Both the position numbers and the translations under genes were made by a program. DNA of 63,821 nucleotides, filler included, from Reticulomyxa filosa (Eukaryota; Protista; Foraminifera): the NCBI GenBank assembly GCA_000512085.1. It is 19 parts of 19 records of this genome, joined end to end, with 100 filler letters (N's around TTAATTAATTAA, not from the genome) between each part and the next. Parts side by side here need not be neighbours in the genome. Positions count along the whole stretch, not along the records: positions 15,943 to 19,723 come from ASPP01022575.1; 18 more parts are not named here. One strand, written 5' to 3'. Shown here piece after piece: positions 2,252 through 19,723 of the stretch (positions are counted from its first letter, which is position 1; every line of letters starts with the position of its first letter). Below the pieces are notes generated by a model that saw only the letters and a program-made list of their open reading frames with translations, was not told where the DNA came from and ran no database searches.

Positions 2252-3228
2252 TTATTCAAAATCAAAGTCATTCCAATTCACAGTTCTTGTTTTCCACCAA
2301 TATGACGAAGTACCCCCAAACAGTTATTGACGATATTGCCAGCTTCATTCTTATACCAACTGCTGCATCCAGTGTTCCATACACTCTGACGCAATTGTGC
2401 ATGTAAGTGTTCATTAAATTGGTCTTGCACTTTTAACTTTACATCCATGGATTTGATGTGAGGACCTTCCATAATAAGTTTTTCGATGCAGTTTATAATG
2501 TAATCGACTTGACATTCAGCCATAAAAATGACAGAGTGGTGTCCAATGTTGGTGTTGGGTCCATACACTATGAATAAGTTTGGGAAGCCATGAGTTACAA
2601 TTCCATAATATGCGCGAGGATCATCTCCTCGCCACATCTCCTTAAGATTGACACCATTTTTGCCGAAAATGTCAACTGATGACAAAAACAAGTTGCTGTG
2701 AAAGCCAGTTGCCAGTATGATACCATCTTTGAGATATAACATAAATTTATAAGTGTGTATGTGTATACAATGAATATTATTTATATTTCGTGAATAAGAA
2801 AAAAAAAAAAAAAAAATACCTAAAGGGATTTCTTCTTGTGATCCTTGATGTTTAATGCCCCCTTTGGTGAATTTTTCAATGGGATCAGTGATGACGTGGA
2901 CGTGGTCCATAGCAATGGTCGGATACCAATCGTCGCTGAACATGGCGCGCTTGCACCCGACTTTGAATGGTACATCGGTGTATTTGATGACTTTGTCTCT
3001 CTTCTCCTTTGACTTTAGTGACGACAAAAACCTCTCTTTTGGATGCTGCACGTATTTGTACAATGTCAGTCGATGCCCCAAGCGATCTTCGTCAGAGTCA
3101 AGCAATAAGGGCCAGAGGAGTTCCAATGTCCAATATAGCACATAGCGATTGGTCCAATTGATCCAAGGATTCCAATCACGAATCAGCCGCTCTGTCTTTG
3201 AAATTGTCTTATCGCCTCTAATGAACAA
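2252..3228 (-). CDS. Baeyer-Villiger / flavin-containing monooxygenase, C-terminal part (5' end cut by contig edge)
   Basis: Motifs GCKR..SDDWYP, D.IILATGF, AYYGIVTHGFPNLFIVYGPNT, SVWNTGCSSWY. A stop-free 93-nt GT-AG intron (2727-2819) gives EEIPL-DGIILATGF when spliced. A typical C-terminus (GTSSYWWKTR..DFDFE*, stop 2252-2254) lies one frame over at a G5 run (2313-2317). Confidence 0.88.
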
Positions 3229-3339
3229 ATGAGATATGCTTCTCTTTTCGACGTCACGTCACACGCGATGGGACCACGTTGCACACAAATACAAGAGCAC
3301 GTCAATCATATATGTACATATATATATATATATATATAT

Positions 3340-3439
3340 NNNNNNNNNNNNNNNNNNNNNNNNNNNNNNNNNNNNNNNNNNNNTTAATTAATTAANNNNN
3401 NNNNNNNNNNNNNNNNNNNNNNNNNNNNNNNNNNNNNNN
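3340..3439. other. Artificial contig-joining spacer (first of 18 identical copies)
   Basis: 44 N + TTAATTAATTAA (stops in all six frames) + 44 N. Copies at 3340-3439, 7024-7123, 12154-12253, 14163-14262, 15843-15942, 19724-19823, 21759-21858, 24326-24425, 26520-26619, 33264-33363, 36864-36963, 40761-40860, 42417-42516, 44567-44666, 48387-48486, 54820-54919, 57830-57929, 62691-62790. Confidence 0.97.
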
Positions 3440-3997
3440 GTGATGAAGAACAAATGACATTTTGACGATGGTTATGATAATGATATGGCGAAAATTTCGC
3501 ACAATACACAAGATTTGAATGTCCATTGAATGATTGAATTTGTTTGTTGTTATCAACATCCCATACACGAACTGTTTTATCATTTGATCCAGAACAAATG
3601 AATTGGCCATCACAAATGTTGAAAAATCAATACTCCACACGCGATCAGTATGTCCATGGAATGCTTTGAGCAATTTAGACGTTGAACTAAATACATTAAG
3701 CATGAAGATTGCGGTTGCCTATGTTAAATAGAAATATAACAATCAAATAAATAATGTCATTAAATAAAACAAATAAACGAAAAAAACATAACATAATTGA
3801 AAACGAGTTTATCAAAATCATGAATCCATCCAGATGTGATGTTTAATATTCGAATCCAATGTTGAATAATTATTTGGATTTCTTCTTCTTCTGACTAACT
3901 CAGTCACATACAAGCACAGTAAAAACAATGAAAATCTTAAGAGATTGATAATTCTTACCAATGACTGCGTTATTTTTTGTTTTTCAATAGTATTCAT
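3440..3997 (-). CDS. WD40-repeat protein of a lineage-expanded family, 5' part with one frameshift
   Basis: N-terminal family motif IQIIIQHWIRILNITSGWIHDFDKLV, two introns, then GHTDRVWSIDFS / ICSGSNDKTVRVWD / GHSNLVYCAKFS. Frameshift near 3612. Confidence 0.8.
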
Positions 3998-15257: not shown

Positions 15258-16194
15258 TATTTTTTATGATACAAGCAAACTACAAAAAAAGATTGAATGA
15301 AAAGTTCTGTGATACCTTTTAAAGTCTCAACAGCTACAGCACTTTAAACATAGTCACTTAATTAGAGTTTAAGAAATTGATATTCGCTGTTTGCTATTTT
15401 TTAGCCGTTGAAACGTTTGCATGTGATATCAACAAATACTACTAAACAACAATAAATATTCTTTTTCGTATTGACCAGTGCTTTATATTTTGATAGAAGT
15501 TATAAAAATAAATTTTGACAATGTTACCAGAATTCAAAAATTTTATCTTTTGAACACAACAAAAGATTTCCAAAATTGAGTTTCTATCTCAAGATATAAT
15601 ATGTCAGACAAAATATTGCAAGAGATGAAACTTTTATTGGAAAATAAACTTCAGAAAAGTAAATTTATAACTTTTGTTTGGTTGGTTTTTCTATGAAAAT
15701 TAGTTAAAAAGAATATAAAGTGCAATTTTTATTGTCATATATGTAGCAACAAATGCCATAAAATATCTTATGTGTACACTGTCCAAAAATTTGGATAGTC
15801 GTATTTGATATTTACAAATTTTTAATCATAATATAAACTTGANNNNNNNNNNNNNNNNNNNNNNNNNNNNNNNNNNNNNNNNNNNNTTAATTAATTAANN
15901 NNNNNNNNNNNNNNNNNNNNNNNNNNNNNNNNNNNNNNNNNNTAAATATCCATCAAACAACAAAAAAAATGATCAACGAATATTTTTTTCTACATTTTTG
16001 TCAACTATAAAAATTTTTATCGACAATTTTATTTTGTTTTATTTTTTGAGTTTGTGGAGAGCTTGGAGCAGAAGTTGGTAAGTGCAATCCGACAGACGCT
16101 CTTATTGAAAGCAGTTTTCAATAAAGCAAAAGTAAATTAATAAAAGAACAACAACAAAAGGAAAGAAAGCAACGAAAAAAGTGAAGATAGTTTT

Positions 16195-16267
16195 GGAGAA
16201 GTTCAGTCCACGGGGGACTCTTCAGACCCTTCAGAGTTTCTCCCTCTGTAGTAGAGTCTTGCCCTAC
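16195..16267 (-). repeat. Dispersed structured element with a hammerhead-like core, copy 1
   Basis: Minus strand reads GTAGGGC-AAG-ACTCTAC hairpin ... GGAGAA ACTC-TGAA-GGGT CTGAAGA GTCC-CCCGT-GGAC TGAAC TTCTCC. Aligns with 60430-60500 (+). Confidence 0.55.
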
Positions 16268-16883
16268 AAGTTTTTAAGAGTTGTTTTTTGTAATTTGTTT
16301 TGTTTATTTGGAATGTTTCATTATGAGGTATTTTTTAGTGTTCGGTTTTTTCTCCTTCAAAATTTTTGTTTTAAAAATAAAACGTTTTCAAACTCTGTCA
16401 AATACAGATCCATTGATAACCTTTGAAATGGAGAAAATTGTTGCATAATTTCAATATACAAGCGAAATCAGCAAAAAAGTGTACGAATTGACGGGAGTTT
16501 CTTGTTTGTACGTACACTTTAGTGCACTTGACTTCACACACGCTTTTTTAGTTGTTCGTGGCCATGAAATAGCTTTCGCAAATCGAACTATTAGCACGAA
16601 TTACACAAAGCAAGTTTTGTTGAAGAGTAATCCACAGTTTCATTTTGCAATCTTTCTGGGGAAAAACAAACCAATACCAACAATTAAACGCTGTTGTTTG
16701 GAGGATGAATATAACGAAAGTACAGATAATGGCAAACTATTCATGAAAAGTTGAAATTGATTCACTGTTTAACGTTTGAAAGGGTAAACATGGACAAACA
16801 TTTTGAATAGCAAAAAATTCCCAAAAAAATTTAGATTGAGAAATAAAGTAATTAATGTTCTTTTAAAAATGCATTTCATATCA

Positions 16884-18599
16884 TTATTCTTTTGCTTTTT
16901 GCTCCAATTCTCGACTTTGAGCTTGAACTTGAAGATTGACCAATATACCGATACTGGTATTTATACTAGTCAAAGTTTCCTCCATTCTATTTAATGTTTC
17001 CAATTTTTTTAAATTTTCTAATTGATCCAGTTTTTTGGACATATCTTTCACGTCAGTAGTAATTTTTTTTGTATCGGAAGAAAGTTGATCCATAGTCTTT
17101 TTGAGACATAAAGCGACAATTAATCCATATTGTTGATCAAATGTAAAATATAGAGCACGCGATCCATACGTATGTAATGTATTTTTAAGGAACTCGAGTT
17201 CTAAAGCTAAATCAGCACATTTCGTGAAATCGCGTTCTACTACTGGAATGAATTGTGAATAAAAAGCTGTTTACATAAATAATAAATTATATAGCAAAAA
17301 GATTTATTCAATTGTTTATGTTTGTATTTATATGCAATGAAAAACTGTTTGTTAAAGATTGATCAATAATAAATACTGTTTGCTCAGTGTGCATTTTGTT
17401 CATTTCTCTAATCAACGTATTGTGTTGAGCTTTAACTAAGTCATTTCTCTTGTACTCGATGTAGTTTGAAAGTTGATCGATTTCGAACATTCCTTCTACT
17501 GTGACAACGATTTCTTCTTTCTTTGAACCAAAGCTAATCATTACTCCGAGAACCTCTTCAAGTAACTGACAATTAATCTTATTCTTCATTACTTTTTGTT
17601 TCTTTATTACTTTTTAGTTATTTTTTTTTCTCTTGTATTATGAACACACGAGACTATTATCTCCAAAGAGTAGCTCTTTGGAAGCTTATCAAATTTTTTA
17701 CCTTTTCTTTCGTACAACATCTTTTTAAGGAAAATTACAGCACTTTTGCAGATAGGCGGTAACTACATGATACATTTCACCTATTTTTTCATGTTACATA
17801 TTTACATATACAAACAATACAAAAAATCTAGTTTAAACAATGTACTACTGATAAAATTGAATTCCAATTGCCAAGTTGACTTGGACAATTTTTTAGTTGT
17901 CAAATCCGATTTATCGATACGATTCAGGATTTCACAGTAAGTTTGTTGAGATTTTGGTTCGTTCAATTGCTTGGCAATGTCGTCAATATTGTTTCCCAAA
18001 TCTTAATGTCCCATAATGTTAATTGCGATGATATACAATGGAACGCAACCAAGACATCAAATTGGATATTTTTCATACAATTAAAATTTAAGGCGTTTTG
18101 CATTGTGTATACTCACGTTCGACAATGTATCCTCATCCTTGGATATCATTTGCTGTCTGTTTAATCAACGTAGCCAAGCGCGAAAAAAACGGACGATATA
18201 CAATTTCTTCAATAATGCCATGATGTGCTGTTCTAAGCACACTTTGTGGAATATCCAGCAAAAACACTAAATCTCCATCGTATGAATCGGCAATGGCTGT
18301 TCCTTTTTGAACACTCCCTCCCAACACTGCCCCAAAAAATTTCGCACCCGACCAATCTTCTTTTTCCTTGTCAAATATACTGAATACATTTTTCTCGATC
18401 ATTTCATTACATAAATTTTGCGCACCTCCACCACTGCTCGGGTTTGATAATCACGGATTTTATAATGCCTTATTGCGCTTTTTACATTCGAAAAAGCGCC
18501 CAAGCTTGATGGCATGTCATCGTCGTCTTTCTCTTGATCCTTTTCGTGTTGCTCATGGATATCAATAAAGCGTATTTTATCAAGAGGTTTGTCTTCCAT
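16884..18599 (-). CDS. 2'-5'-oligoadenylate synthetase (OAS)-like nucleotidyltransferase with an OAS1_C-like domain and a C-terminal coiled coil; reading frame broken several times (errors, tiny introns or pseudogene)
   Basis: Collinear OAS motifs: GGSVQKGTAIADSYDGDLVFLL (about 18260-18321), IQFDVLVAF (about 18040-18066), PKSQQTYCEIL, EFNFISSTLFKLDFL, LPPICKSAVIFLK, LPKSYSLEIIV (about 17652-17684), TVFIIDQSLTN. Confidence 0.8.
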
Positions 18600-19160
18600 T
18601 GGAAAATTCAATCTTTCACAATCTAGCCAAAAGAAAAAAGTAGTTCAAAGTGAAAAACTAAAAAAGTCAACTCCAACAACTTGAACTTTTCGGTCAGCTA
18701 CTTAAAAAAAAGTGGAGAATATCCAATGCATAATAGATTGTTTCGTGTTCTTTGTAATTACTTTATAGAATTAGAAACACTTATCATAGTCCACTAATAA
18801 ATATATTTGGACACAATGAAATTTGTCATAATATCTTCATCGTTGTAATCGAGTAATGCATAATACTTTTGCAATGTAAGATTTGTTATTTGAAGGATTG
18901 CATCGTCAGTGTTATACCCATTCGAAATAGATGGGAAAAACTAAATAAAAAATATGTAGCATAATGTAATATTTTTGAAGACATTCAACAATAAAGACAC
19001 ATTTCACTGTTTTATATTTAATTTTAAAATTGAGCATTAAATAAAAATGTGTAAATGTGCACTTATATTAATATTTATTTCAAACTTTTTGATTATGTTT
19101 AGTGATCAAGTTAAAGCAAAATGGAATATATTTGCGCTGAAAAAGAAAAAAGTTTGAGAT

Positions 19161-19723
19161 TTATGAAAAAGTAGCATTTGCTAAAGATGTACAAGTCAAA
19201 GGACCTTTAGAAGTCATAAAACGAATTCCGTTAAAACAAGCTTCACAACGATCATTAGTTTTTAAAAAAGGAACAACATCATCCCATGGAGTCGGTCCTT
19301 TCTTTTTTTTGGTTTTAAATCAATTTCAGAATCAGGAGTATATCTAGTTAAATCATCATTTTCAAGAATAATACGTTCACCTATTGAACAATCTTTAGGA
19401 GGACGAATTAATTCAATTTTAGATTTGTCAGAATTACTTGCTGCAAATATCATACCATTTGACATTACACCTCTTAAATCTGTTGGTTTTAAATTTTTAA
19501 ATACAATAACAAGTGAATCTCGCACTTCATTTATTGGTACGTGTAATCGCACTGCACTTGCTATTGTGCGTGGTCCAGTTGCTTCTCCTAAATCTATTTC
19601 TTCTACATACATTTTATCTGCATTTTGATGATTTTCACATTTTAATACTTTACCAACAACAAATTCACATCTACCAATAGAAGGAATATTATTATTATTA
19701 TTATCATTTTCATTTGTAGCATT
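19161..19723 (-). CDS. EMAP-II/Myf-like tRNA-binding OB domain (C-terminus of an AIMP1/Arc1p-like protein or a tRNA synthetase)
   Basis: FVVGKVLKCENHQNADKMYVEEIDLGEATGPRTIAS..NLKPTDLRGVMSNGMIFAAS..IELIRPP...IGERI. A frameshift in the A8 run (19303-19310) restores PWDDVVPFLKTNDRCEACFNG..TSKGPLTCTSLANATFS*. Confidence 0.9.

What the first reader, a model, noticed from the sequence alone, without database searches (positions are those of the whole stretch)
16884..18599. Hidden OAS-like (2'-5' oligoadenylate synthetase) immune nucleotidyltransferase in a rhizarian-type genome
Seen in sequence: five small minus-strand ORFs plus unlisted pieces line up in OAS order. GGSVQKGT..SYDGDLVFLL matches OAS GGSxxKGT..SDADLVVFL (two catalytic Asp), IQFDVLVAF matches VEFDVLPAF (third Asp), PKSQQTYCEIL matches PNPQIYVKLI, KLDFL..LPPICKSAVIFLK matches QRDFL..RPTKLKSLIRLVK, LPKSYSLEIIV matches LPPQYALELLT, and FIIDQS matches VILDPA. 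An extra coiled coil follows. Established knowledge: OAS enzymes belong to the cGAS/CD-NTase superfamily and are best known as animal dsRNA sensors that make 2-5A to activate RNase L. Inference: a foraminiferan-type protist may have an antiviral nucleotide second-messenger pathway. Caveat: the frame breaks at about 18400, 18135, 18080, 17765 and 17600, mostly in homopolymers, so this copy could be a pseudogene.
Basis: partly seen in the sequence, partly recalled or inferred. Interest (0 to 1): 0.85.

Follow-up and report, generated by a model that had tools for sequence, protein, structure and literature searches.

The report
Broken OAS-like gene copy in Reticulomyxa
The window holds a decayed, non-functional copy of a divergent OAS-type nucleotidyltransferase gene of the foraminiferan Reticulomyxa filosa; a 2023 survey of eukaryotic immune enzymes had already catalogued this gene family in this species, so the locus is real but fairly ordinary.

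Summary
The piece is a 3781-nt Reticulomyxa filosa contig. On its minus strand, 18599-16884, lies a three-exon gene with introns of 86 and 79 nt.

**Family.** Exon 1 encodes a Pol-beta-type nucleotidyltransferase core with the G-S loop, the D-x-D strand and the third Asp. The closest relatives outside the species are true OAS proteins:
- whole-library phmmer: E 2e-6 and 6e-6
- family profile against an OAS profile: 92.7 %, E 4e-7, 204 columns
- ESM Atlas: OAS is the best hit by features and by structure

Pfam's OAS1_C model is not reached, and the last ~115 aligned residues before the coiled-coil tail show no OAS similarity.

**State of this copy.** It is a pseudogene. Against a paralogue with an unbroken exon 1 (L005) it has two nonsense substitutions and five 1-nt deletions in exon 1, plus a further frame change in exon 2. 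Four of these lesions are shared with a second decayed copy (L001). dN/dS between the two is about 0.8.

The break at "17765" is really an intron, and the "KLDFL" motif lies inside it.

**Novelty.** Low. Culbertson & Levin 2023 already score R. filosa as OAS-positive, and their tree includes close paralogues.

The parts
17849..18599 (-). Exon 1 of the OAS-like gene: N-terminal helix and nucleotidyltransferase core. Read in three different frames because of the lesions.
   Evidence: ATG at 18599. Collinear with the unbroken 253-codon exon of paralogue L005/P0009. tblastn with P0003/P0004/P0005.
18298..18321 (-). G-G-S...K-G-T loop (the G-S motif of Pol-beta-type NTases)
   Evidence: Aligned to the OAS G-G-S-x-G-K-G-T loop.
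18256..18285 (-). D-x-D strand carrying the first two catalytic Asp
   Evidence: Aligned to the OAS D-A-D-L-V strand.
18041..18067 (-). Strand with the third catalytic Asp (F-D-V). Now in a different frame from the D-x-D strand.
   Evidence: OAS HMM positions 137-153.
18425..18426 (-). 1-nt deletion (a C is missing between these bases), specific to this copy and not in a homopolymer. It causes the first frame break.
   Evidence: L001 and L005 both carry the C. P0001 reads straight through.
18133..18135 (-). In-frame TGA where the intact paralogue has GGA (Gly). Shared with copy L001.
18088..18090 (-). In-frame TAA where the intact paralogue has TAC (Tyr). Shared with L001.
18073..18075 (-). 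1-nt deletion inside a TGG (Trp) codon, giving TGA plus a frameshift. Shared with L001.
17992..17997 (-). 1-nt deletion in an A run (AAA against AAAA in L005), a frameshift. Shared with L001.
17872..17886 (-). Two separate 1-nt deletions, at 17886 and 17872, specific to this copy.
17763..17848 (-). Intron 1: 86 nt, GT...AG, phase 0.
   Evidence: One search corrected. The frame arithmetic fits (0 + 86 gives frame 2). The mean R. filosa intron is 87 bp (PMC13746701).
17346..17762 (-). Exon 2: helices of the OAS C-terminal lobe, including L-P-K-S-Y-S-L-E-I-I (17684-17652), then a K/E-rich spacer and a region with no detectable OAS similarity.
   Evidence: tblastn with P0004. hhalign reaches as far as this helix. 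The remainder gives no hit.
17570..17630 (-). Net -1 frame change inside the K/E-rich spacer. It aligns to L001 as two 2-nt gaps at about 17625 and 17575.
   Evidence: L001 reads this stretch in one frame.
17267..17345 (-). Intron 2: 79 nt, GT...AG, phase 1.
   Evidence: One search corrected by hand from the sequence. The junction restores the F-Y-S-Q-F-I-P reading seen in P0004.
16884..17266 (-). Exon 3 with the stop codon (16886-16884): a conserved block, then a K/E/L/N-rich tail that is probably coiled coil.
   Evidence: Only weak Pfam hits to coiled-coil-type families. In-frame 42-, 6- and 3-nt indels against L001.

Best explanation
The locus is a pseudogene copy of a lineage-specific, highly divergent OAS-superfamily nucleotidyltransferase gene of Reticulomyxa filosa.

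The ancestral gene had three exons. It encoded a Pol-beta-type NTase core (G-S loop, D-x-D, third Asp), the first helices of an OAS-type C-terminal lobe, and a species-specific C-terminal region ending in a probable coiled coil.

By homology, an intact member would bind NTP-Mg2+ at the three acidic residues. It would most likely make 2'-5'-linked oligonucleotide or related nucleotide signals after activation by a nucleic-acid ligand. This step is inferred and was not shown.

The window copy cannot do this. Two nonsense substitutions and at least six frameshifts split the catalytic residues over different frames. The longest open piece has 89 codons counted from its first ATG (105 from stop to stop) and lacks the third Asp.

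The copy, together with its sister copy L001, descends from an already inactivated gene and has since drifted almost neutrally.
For: **Organism and copies**
- The piece is the R. filosa contig carrying RFI_26061.
- Sister contig L001 is 95 % identical overall.
- Third copy L005 has an unbroken 253-codon exon 1.

**OAS affinity**
- phmmer of the 92-aa catalytic piece against 1.84 billion representatives finds only four R. filosa proteins (the sister copy P0001 and three paralogues). Below them come one repeat-rich bacterial protein that looks compositional, and two proteins with strong Pfam OAS1_C matches, at E 2.4e-6 and 6.3e-6.
- hhalign of the family profile against an OAS profile gives 92.7 % probability, E 4.4e-7, over 204 collinear columns.
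- The ESM Atlas puts OAS3 first by features (0.95). The four best structural rows are all OAS, TM 0.56-0.57.
- An OAS HMM hits only the catalytic piece among the 165 pieces of the contig.
- VIA-align ranks OAS1 first (Z 7.7), and all 50 rows shown are nucleotidyltransferase-fold proteins, most of them Pol-beta-type NTases.
- The Foldseek list is almost entirely cGAS and OAS.
- The literature scores R. filosa as OAS = 1 and places its paralogues in the OAS clade.

**Pseudogene status**
- The two stop substitutions and two of the deletions are shared by two independently assembled contigs that differ by 12-17 % in exons 2-3.
- L001 has three further stops of its own.
- dN/dS between W and L001 is 0.80 over 241 codons. 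It is 0.48 against the intact L005.
Against: - No raw reads or RNA data could be laid on the locus. The only holders were contigs of a 'synthetic metagenome', identical to the assembly over 187 nt and probably derived from it. The lesions therefore rest on the public assembly.
- That assembly does show at least one likely homopolymer miscount nearby: A8 against A9 at 19311, within an otherwise 100 % identical 1.1-kb stretch.
- Three of the deletions lie in short runs of identical bases.
- Pfam does not recognise OAS1_C or NTP_transf_2 above threshold in any piece or paralogue.
- The family profile and P0004 found no OAS chain in the PDB by sequence.
- The AlphaFold models are of low confidence, pLDDT 40-47. 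By structure alone, OAS ties with TENT/TUTase and cGAS.
Confidence: 0.8

Rival explanations
1. The gene is functional, and the breaks are sequencing or assembly errors in a fragmented draft genome.
For: - The neighbouring tRNA-binding-domain gene is broken in the window only by an A8/A9 run difference against L001.
- Three of the deletions are in short runs of identical bases.
- All three catalytic acidic residues and the G-S loop are still encoded.
Against: - Two lesions are base substitutions to stop codons, and two deletions are not in homopolymers.
- Four lesions recur in a second contig that is clearly a different sequence, 83-88 % identical in exons 2-3.
- dN/dS is about 0.8.
- Eight or more errors in 1.7 kb would far exceed the one difference seen in the adjacent 1.1 kb.
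Confidence: 0.08
2. The gene family is a Pol-beta-fold nucleotidyltransferase of another kind (terminal uridylyl/adenylyl transferase, DZF/NF45-like, Mab21/cGLR). The OAS resemblance would then reflect only the shared fold.
For: - By structure, OAS1 (Z 7.7) ties with GLD-2, URT1, Tailor and cGAS at Z 7.0-7.6.
- cGAS tops the Foldseek list.
- DZF, Nrap and Mab-21 clusters appear at 0.88-0.90 in the Atlas feature search.
- Pfam OAS1_C is not matched.
Against: - In an all-against-library sequence search, the significant hits outside the species were two OAS proteins and one repeat-rich bacterial protein that looks compositional. There were no TENT, PAP, DZF or Mab21 proteins.
- The profile alignment to OAS runs beyond the NTase core into OAS-specific C-lobe helices.
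- OAS is first in both Atlas searches.
- The published phylogeny places the paralogues with OAS-like proteins next to bacterial clade C CD-NTases.
Confidence: 0.08
3. The motif matches are chance, and the ORF pieces are not a gene.
Against: - Five further related copies exist in the same genome at four other loci. Three of them have long open exons.
- The splice sites and intron sizes are typical of the species.
- The profile E-values are about 1e-7.
Confidence: 0.01

Closest known systems
Vertebrate 2'-5'-oligoadenylate synthetases (OAS1/2/3, OASL; Pfam NTP_transf_2 + OAS1_C)
   Same: - N-terminal helix, G-S loop, D-x-D strand and third-Asp strand.
- The following helices up to the L-P-x-x-Y-x-L-E-L-L motif, all in the same order.
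- OAS is the best hit outside the species by sequence, by profile and by language-model features.
   Different: - About 18 % identity at profile level.
- Below the Pfam thresholds for OAS1_C.
- The distal C-lobe, including the region of the OAS P-loop-like I-L-D-P-A-D-P motif, is not detectably similar.
- There is a K/E-rich insert and an extra coiled-coil-like tail.
- This copy is a pseudogene.
- No dsRNA activation or RNase L partner is known in Foraminifera.
Protist OAS-like proteins of the OAS superfamily of Culbertson & Levin 2023 (dinoflagellates, Chlamydomonadales, and five R. filosa proteins EP00480_P006249, P007837, P025644, P024262, P021013)
   Same: - It is the same gene family.
- P006249 matches P0009 over the stretch of sequence shown (about 125 residues), and P0009's exon 1 differs from the window's at only a few per cent of sites.
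- P007837 matches P0004 in its Pfam hit pattern.
   Different: - The window copy (annotated RFI_26061, a 140-aa 'hypothetical protein') is not one of the five R. filosa proteins named in that dataset.
- It is a decayed copy.
Bacterial clade C CD-NTases (CdnC, CBASS)
   Same: The published tree places the OAS superfamily, including the R. filosa clade, next to subclades C02-C03 (main text). The fold is shared (CdnC Z 5.0, CdnD 6.9).
   Different: There is no direct sequence hit here. This is a eukaryotic gene structure with introns, and no Cap effector genes lie beside it.

Membership tests
OAS superfamily (cGAS/OAS-type CD-NTases) | Pol-beta NTase core with a G-[GS] loop and the acidic triad (D/E-x-D/E on strand 2, third D/E on strand 5) | tested here: met
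   All are encoded at 18321-18298, 18285-18256 and 18067-18041. They now lie in different reading frames, separated by stops.
OAS superfamily (cGAS/OAS-type CD-NTases) | Significant sequence or profile similarity to OAS that exceeds the similarity to other NTase families | tested here: met
   - Whole-library phmmer finds two OAS proteins plus one repeat-rich bacterial protein outside the species, at E 1e-6 to 1e-8.
- hhalign gives 92.7 %, E 4.4e-7.
- OAS is first in the Atlas searches.
- No profile comparison against TENT, DZF or Mab21 alignments was run, because no such sequences were in hand.
OAS superfamily (cGAS/OAS-type CD-NTases) | Pfam OAS1_C (PF10421) at its gathering score | tested here: not met
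   None of the pieces or of P0001, P0003, P0004, P0005 and P0009 shows OAS1_C at E <= 1. Only the first helices of that domain align by hhalign. The distal part does not.
OAS superfamily (cGAS/OAS-type CD-NTases) | Phylogenetic placement inside the OAS clade | not tested
   No tree was built here. The published tree (S2 File of PMC10732462) places the paralogues with protist and animal OAS-like sequences with supports of 98-100, and the species catalogue gives OAS = 1.
OAS superfamily (cGAS/OAS-type CD-NTases) | cGAS/OAS-type bilobed fold | tested here: inconclusive
   The AlphaFold models are poor, pLDDT 40-47. The N-lobe matches OAS1 at Z 7.7 but ties with other NTases. Foldseek returns cGAS and OAS at TM about 0.25. 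The Atlas model has TM 0.57 to OAS.
OAS superfamily (cGAS/OAS-type CD-NTases) | Synthesis of 2'-5'-linked oligonucleotides on activation by dsRNA | not testable with these tools
   This needs a biochemical assay of an intact paralogue.
Processed or unprocessed pseudogene (non-functional gene copy) | Disabling lesions relative to an intact paralogue: premature stops and frameshifts | tested here: met
   Two nonsense codons and five 1-nt deletions in exon 1, plus a net -1 frame change in exon 2. The introns are retained, so it is an unprocessed duplicate.
Processed or unprocessed pseudogene (non-functional gene copy) | Relaxed selection | tested here: met
   dN/dS is 0.80 between the two decayed copies and 0.47-0.48 against the intact one.
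Processed or unprocessed pseudogene (non-functional gene copy) | Lesions verified in raw reads, and no full-length transcript | tested here: inconclusive
   No usable runs were found.

The most novel reading that the evidence does not exclude
The R. filosa OAS-like genes could form a fast-evolving, birth-and-death immune gene family.
- Six related copies were seen here, at five loci.
- Three are decayed (the window, L001 and the P0004 locus).
- Two have open exons but substituted catalytic residues (P0003 N-x-N; P0005 S-x-D plus Asn).
- One (L005/P0009) has an intact catalytic exon.
- Exons 2-3 are more divergent between sister copies than the flanking DNA, which suggests gene conversion or diversifying selection.

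If an intact member makes a nucleotide second messenger on infection, Foraminifera would have a working OAS-type sensor with a new C-terminal coiled-coil module and an unknown effector.
Probability: 0.25. Interest if true: 0.55.

Novelty: new member of a known kind. Interest (0 to 1): 0.22.

Why it matters
It confirms, independently and from raw sequence, that Foraminifera carry divergent OAS-superfamily genes. That agrees with the published view that OAS-like CD-NTases are old and widespread in eukaryotes.

The added value is modest:
- The window locus and its sister contig are dead copies.
- Several public R. filosa gene models (RFI_26061, RFI_32460) bridge frameshifts with artificial mini-introns.
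- The family shows a mix of decayed copies, copies with lost catalytic residues and possibly active copies, which is typical of rapidly turning-over defence genes.

Anyone wishing to test protist OAS function should start from the L005-type copy, not from this one.

Tried and rejected
- **Short-intron readings.** I first read the breaks near 18400 and 18000 as 17-nt and 35-nt introns, and the break near 17600 as a 45-nt intron. I rejected this because paralogues L005 and L001 read straight through these places.
- **Reads.** The run search found only two 'synthetic metagenome' contig sets. They carry a single 187-nt identical piece plus short pieces that match parts of other contigs. This gives no independent support.
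- **Word-index searches.** These found only R. filosa proteins.
- **PDB sequence searches.** The family profile and P0004 found no OAS chain. Only the single 105-aa piece hit OAS2, weakly.
- **Pfam.** Nothing above threshold.
- **AlphaFold2.** Both jobs gave low-confidence models, so the fold searches are only indicative.
- **Distal C-terminal region.** hhalign against OAS gave nothing.
- **RNA genes.** No tRNA or Rfam family lies in the piece.
- **R. filosa genome paper.** It is not held in the library.
- **Joined protein.** All searches used single pieces by reference, or natural paralogues.

Full report
**What the piece is.** The 3781-nt piece (window 15943-19723, 31 % G+C) is a whole contig of the Reticulomyxa filosa draft genome. 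The longest open piece of the finding retrieves two NCBI proteins:
- RFI_26061 (P0002), on a contig of exactly 3781 nt
- RFI_38289 (P0001), 96 % identical

P0001's contig ASPP01044644.1 was fetched as L001.

**Gene structure.** Six-frame reading, tblastn with paralogues and DNA alignment of three close copies give a minus-strand gene:

| Part | Window coordinates | Notes |
|---|---|---|
| Exon 1 | 18599-17849 | NTase core |
| Intron 1 | 17848-17763 | 86 nt, GT..AG, phase 0 |
| Exon 2 | 17762-17346 | start of the OAS C-lobe, K/E spacer, unassigned region |
| Intron 2 | 17345-17267 | 79 nt, GT..AG, phase 1 |
| Exon 3 | 17266-16887 | conserved block and tail |
| Stop | 16886-16884 | |

The frame arithmetic fits both introns. 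Their sizes match the species averages of 87 bp and two introns per gene (PMC13746701).

The 'KLDFL' motif (17834-17820) is intron sequence read in a wrong frame. The real exon end is the N-W-N-S-I-L-S stretch at 17869-17849, as in P0003, P0005 and P0009.

**Is it OAS-like?** By sequence, yes, though distantly.
- phmmer with the 92-aa catalytic piece against 1.84 billion cluster representatives found seven proteins:
  - Four are R. filosa proteins: the sister copy P0001 and the paralogues P0003, P0004 and P0005.
  - One is a repeat-rich bacterial protein hit in nine short stretches, which looks compositional.
  - Two are P0007 (E 2.4e-6) and P0008 (E 6.3e-6), which Pfam scores as OAS1_C at 9e-225 and 8e-266.
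  - No TENT, PAP, DZF or Mab21 protein appeared.
- A profile of the R. filosa family (A7) against a profile of seven OAS domains (A6) gives 92.7 % probability and E 4.4e-7 over 204 columns. The alignment runs collinearly through the N-terminal helix, the G-S loop, D-x-D, the third Asp, the P-x-x-Q-x-Y region, the K-x-L-I-R-L-V-K-type helix and L-P-x-x-Y-x-L-E-L-L.
- An HMM of the OAS domains, scanned over all 165 stop-to-stop pieces of both strands, hits only the catalytic piece (E 7.8e-8). It places the third-Asp piece and the L-P-K-S-Y piece at the right model positions, but these are not significant on their own.
- The ESM Atlas puts an OAS3 cluster first by features (0.95, 184 shared features). 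Its four best structural rows are all OAS clusters, TM 0.56-0.57.
- Against the PDB, the single piece finds OAS2 first (E 0.008).

**Limits of the assignment.**
- Pfam does not reach threshold for any family in any piece or paralogue.
- The family profile and P0004 find no OAS chain in the PDB by sequence.
- The two AlphaFold models are poor, pLDDT 40 and 47.
- With the better model, the all-against-representatives aligner ranks OAS1 first (Z 7.7, 113 residues, rmsd 3.7). GLD-2, URT1, Tailor and cGAS follow within one Z unit. All 50 rows shown are nucleotidyltransferase-fold proteins, most of them Pol-beta-type NTases.
- Foldseek lists almost only cGAS and OAS chains, at TM about 0.25.

Structure therefore supports the fold class, and sequence supports OAS within it.

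**It is already in the literature.** Culbertson & Levin 2023 (PLoS Biol, PMC10732462) searched EukProt with iterative HMMs. They report OAS-like proteins in 8 of 12 eukaryotic supergroups.
- Their species catalogue has the columns cGLRs, OAS, eSMODS, STING and Viperin. It gives R. filosa (EP00480) as 0 1 0 0 0 in one table and 0 1 0 1 0 in another.
- Their main tree holds five R. filosa proteins in one clade (support 100). That clade sits beside a Tetrabaena sequence and dinoflagellate OAS-like proteins, and next to a group with animal sequences. All of this lies adjacent to bacterial clade C02-C03 CD-NTases.
- One of the five, P006249, matches P0009 over the stretch of sequence shown, about 125 residues.
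- Another, P007837, shows the same odd PEX11 and Connexin Pfam hits as P0004.

The family is thus catalogued. The window's own copy is not one of the five named there.

**State of this copy.** L005 (ASPP01033577.1) has an unbroken exon 1 of 253 codons. Against it, the window has these lesions:

| Position | Lesion | Shared with L001? |
|---|---|---|
| 18425 | a missing C, not in a homopolymer | no |
| 18135-18133 | TGA for GGA | yes |
| 18090-18088 | TAA for TAC | yes |
| 18075 | one G lost from a TGG codon | yes |
| ~17995 | one A lost from an A4 run | yes |
| 17886 | single-base loss | no |
| 17872 | single-base loss | no |

In exon 2 the frame changes by -1 between about 17630 and 17570. 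This aligns to L001 as two 2-nt gaps.

The sister contig L001 shares the four lesions marked above. It has a deletion of its own at the position of 17951, three further stop codons in exons 2-3 and a Gly-to-Trp change in the G-S loop.

The two contigs are clearly different sequences:

| Region | Identity, window vs L001 |
|---|---|
| Upstream | 100 % |
| Exon 1 | 98.3 % |
| Exon 2 | 87.8 % |
| Exon 3 | 83.3 % |
| Downstream | 96.4 % |

The shared lesions are therefore inherited and are not errors of a single assembly event. dN/dS is 0.80 between the window and L001 over 241 codons. It is 0.47-0.48 between either of them and L005. That is what two drifting copies and one constrained copy would give.

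The public gene model RFI_26061 hides the first frameshift with an artificial splice (compare P0002 with P0001).

**The rest of the family.**
- The P0004 locus (L002) also needs at least two frame corrections, which its gene model bridges, one of them with a 26-nt 'intron'.
- P0003 has an open exon but N-x-N in place of D-x-D.
- P0005 has S-x-D, Asn in place of the third Asp and an altered G-S loop.
- Only L005/P0009 combines an open exon 1 with all catalytic residues. Its contig ends just after that exon.

**Mechanism.** Shown:
- the homology of the core
- the presence of the catalytic motifs
- the disabling lesions

Inferred:
- An intact ancestor or paralogue binds NTP-Mg2+ at the triad. Like OAS, it makes 2'-5'-linked oligonucleotides after binding a nucleic acid.
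- The added tail mediates oligomerisation.

The window copy itself can at best give short N-terminal fragments without the third Asp.

**What was not possible.**
- No raw reads or RNA data could be laid on the locus.
- All searches used single pieces by reference, or natural paralogues.

Noticed in passing
window 19723-19164 (minus strand): This is the 3' part of a gene for a tRNA-binding (EMAP-II/Arc1p-type) domain protein: Pfam tRNA_bind, E 1.6e-25. It is cut by the contig end. In the window it is frameshifted in an A8 run at about 19311. L001 has A9 there and an open 187-residue product. This is the only difference between the two contigs over 1.1 kb, so it is probably an assembly miscount.
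   Followed up: partly
window 17762-16884 versus L001: Identity between the two sister contigs is a mosaic. Exons 2-3 are 83-88 % identical, while the flanks are 96-100 % and the introns 91-95 %. A gene-conversion patch from another paralogue, past diversifying selection or a chimeric assembly could each explain this.
   Followed up: no
L002 (ASPP01028742.1) 145-1327 and 2257-3839: Two paralogues (P0003, P0004) sit head to head on one contig. The P0004 gene model bridges frameshifts with a 26-nt pseudo-intron and skips the segment before the exon 1 end.
   Followed up: partly
P0003 residues 1-110 and P0005 residues 1-170: These two paralogues share an N-terminal extension that the window-type copies lack. 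Pfam finds nothing in it at E <= 1.
   Followed up: no
window 17064 and 17000-16886 versus L001: The K/E/L/N-rich tail differs from L001 by in-frame indels of 42, 6 and 3 nt, as expected of a repetitive coiled-coil-like segment.
   Followed up: no
window 18268-18454: A 187-nt contig identical to the window occurs in two runs labelled 'synthetic metagenome'. It was probably simulated or pooled from reference genomes, so it is not independent evidence.
   Followed up: no
PMC10732462, S1 File: One table of the catalogue also scores R. filosa positive for STING. The paper reports bacteria-like STINGs in Rhizaria, so the species may hold other nucleotide-signalling immune parts.
   Followed up: no
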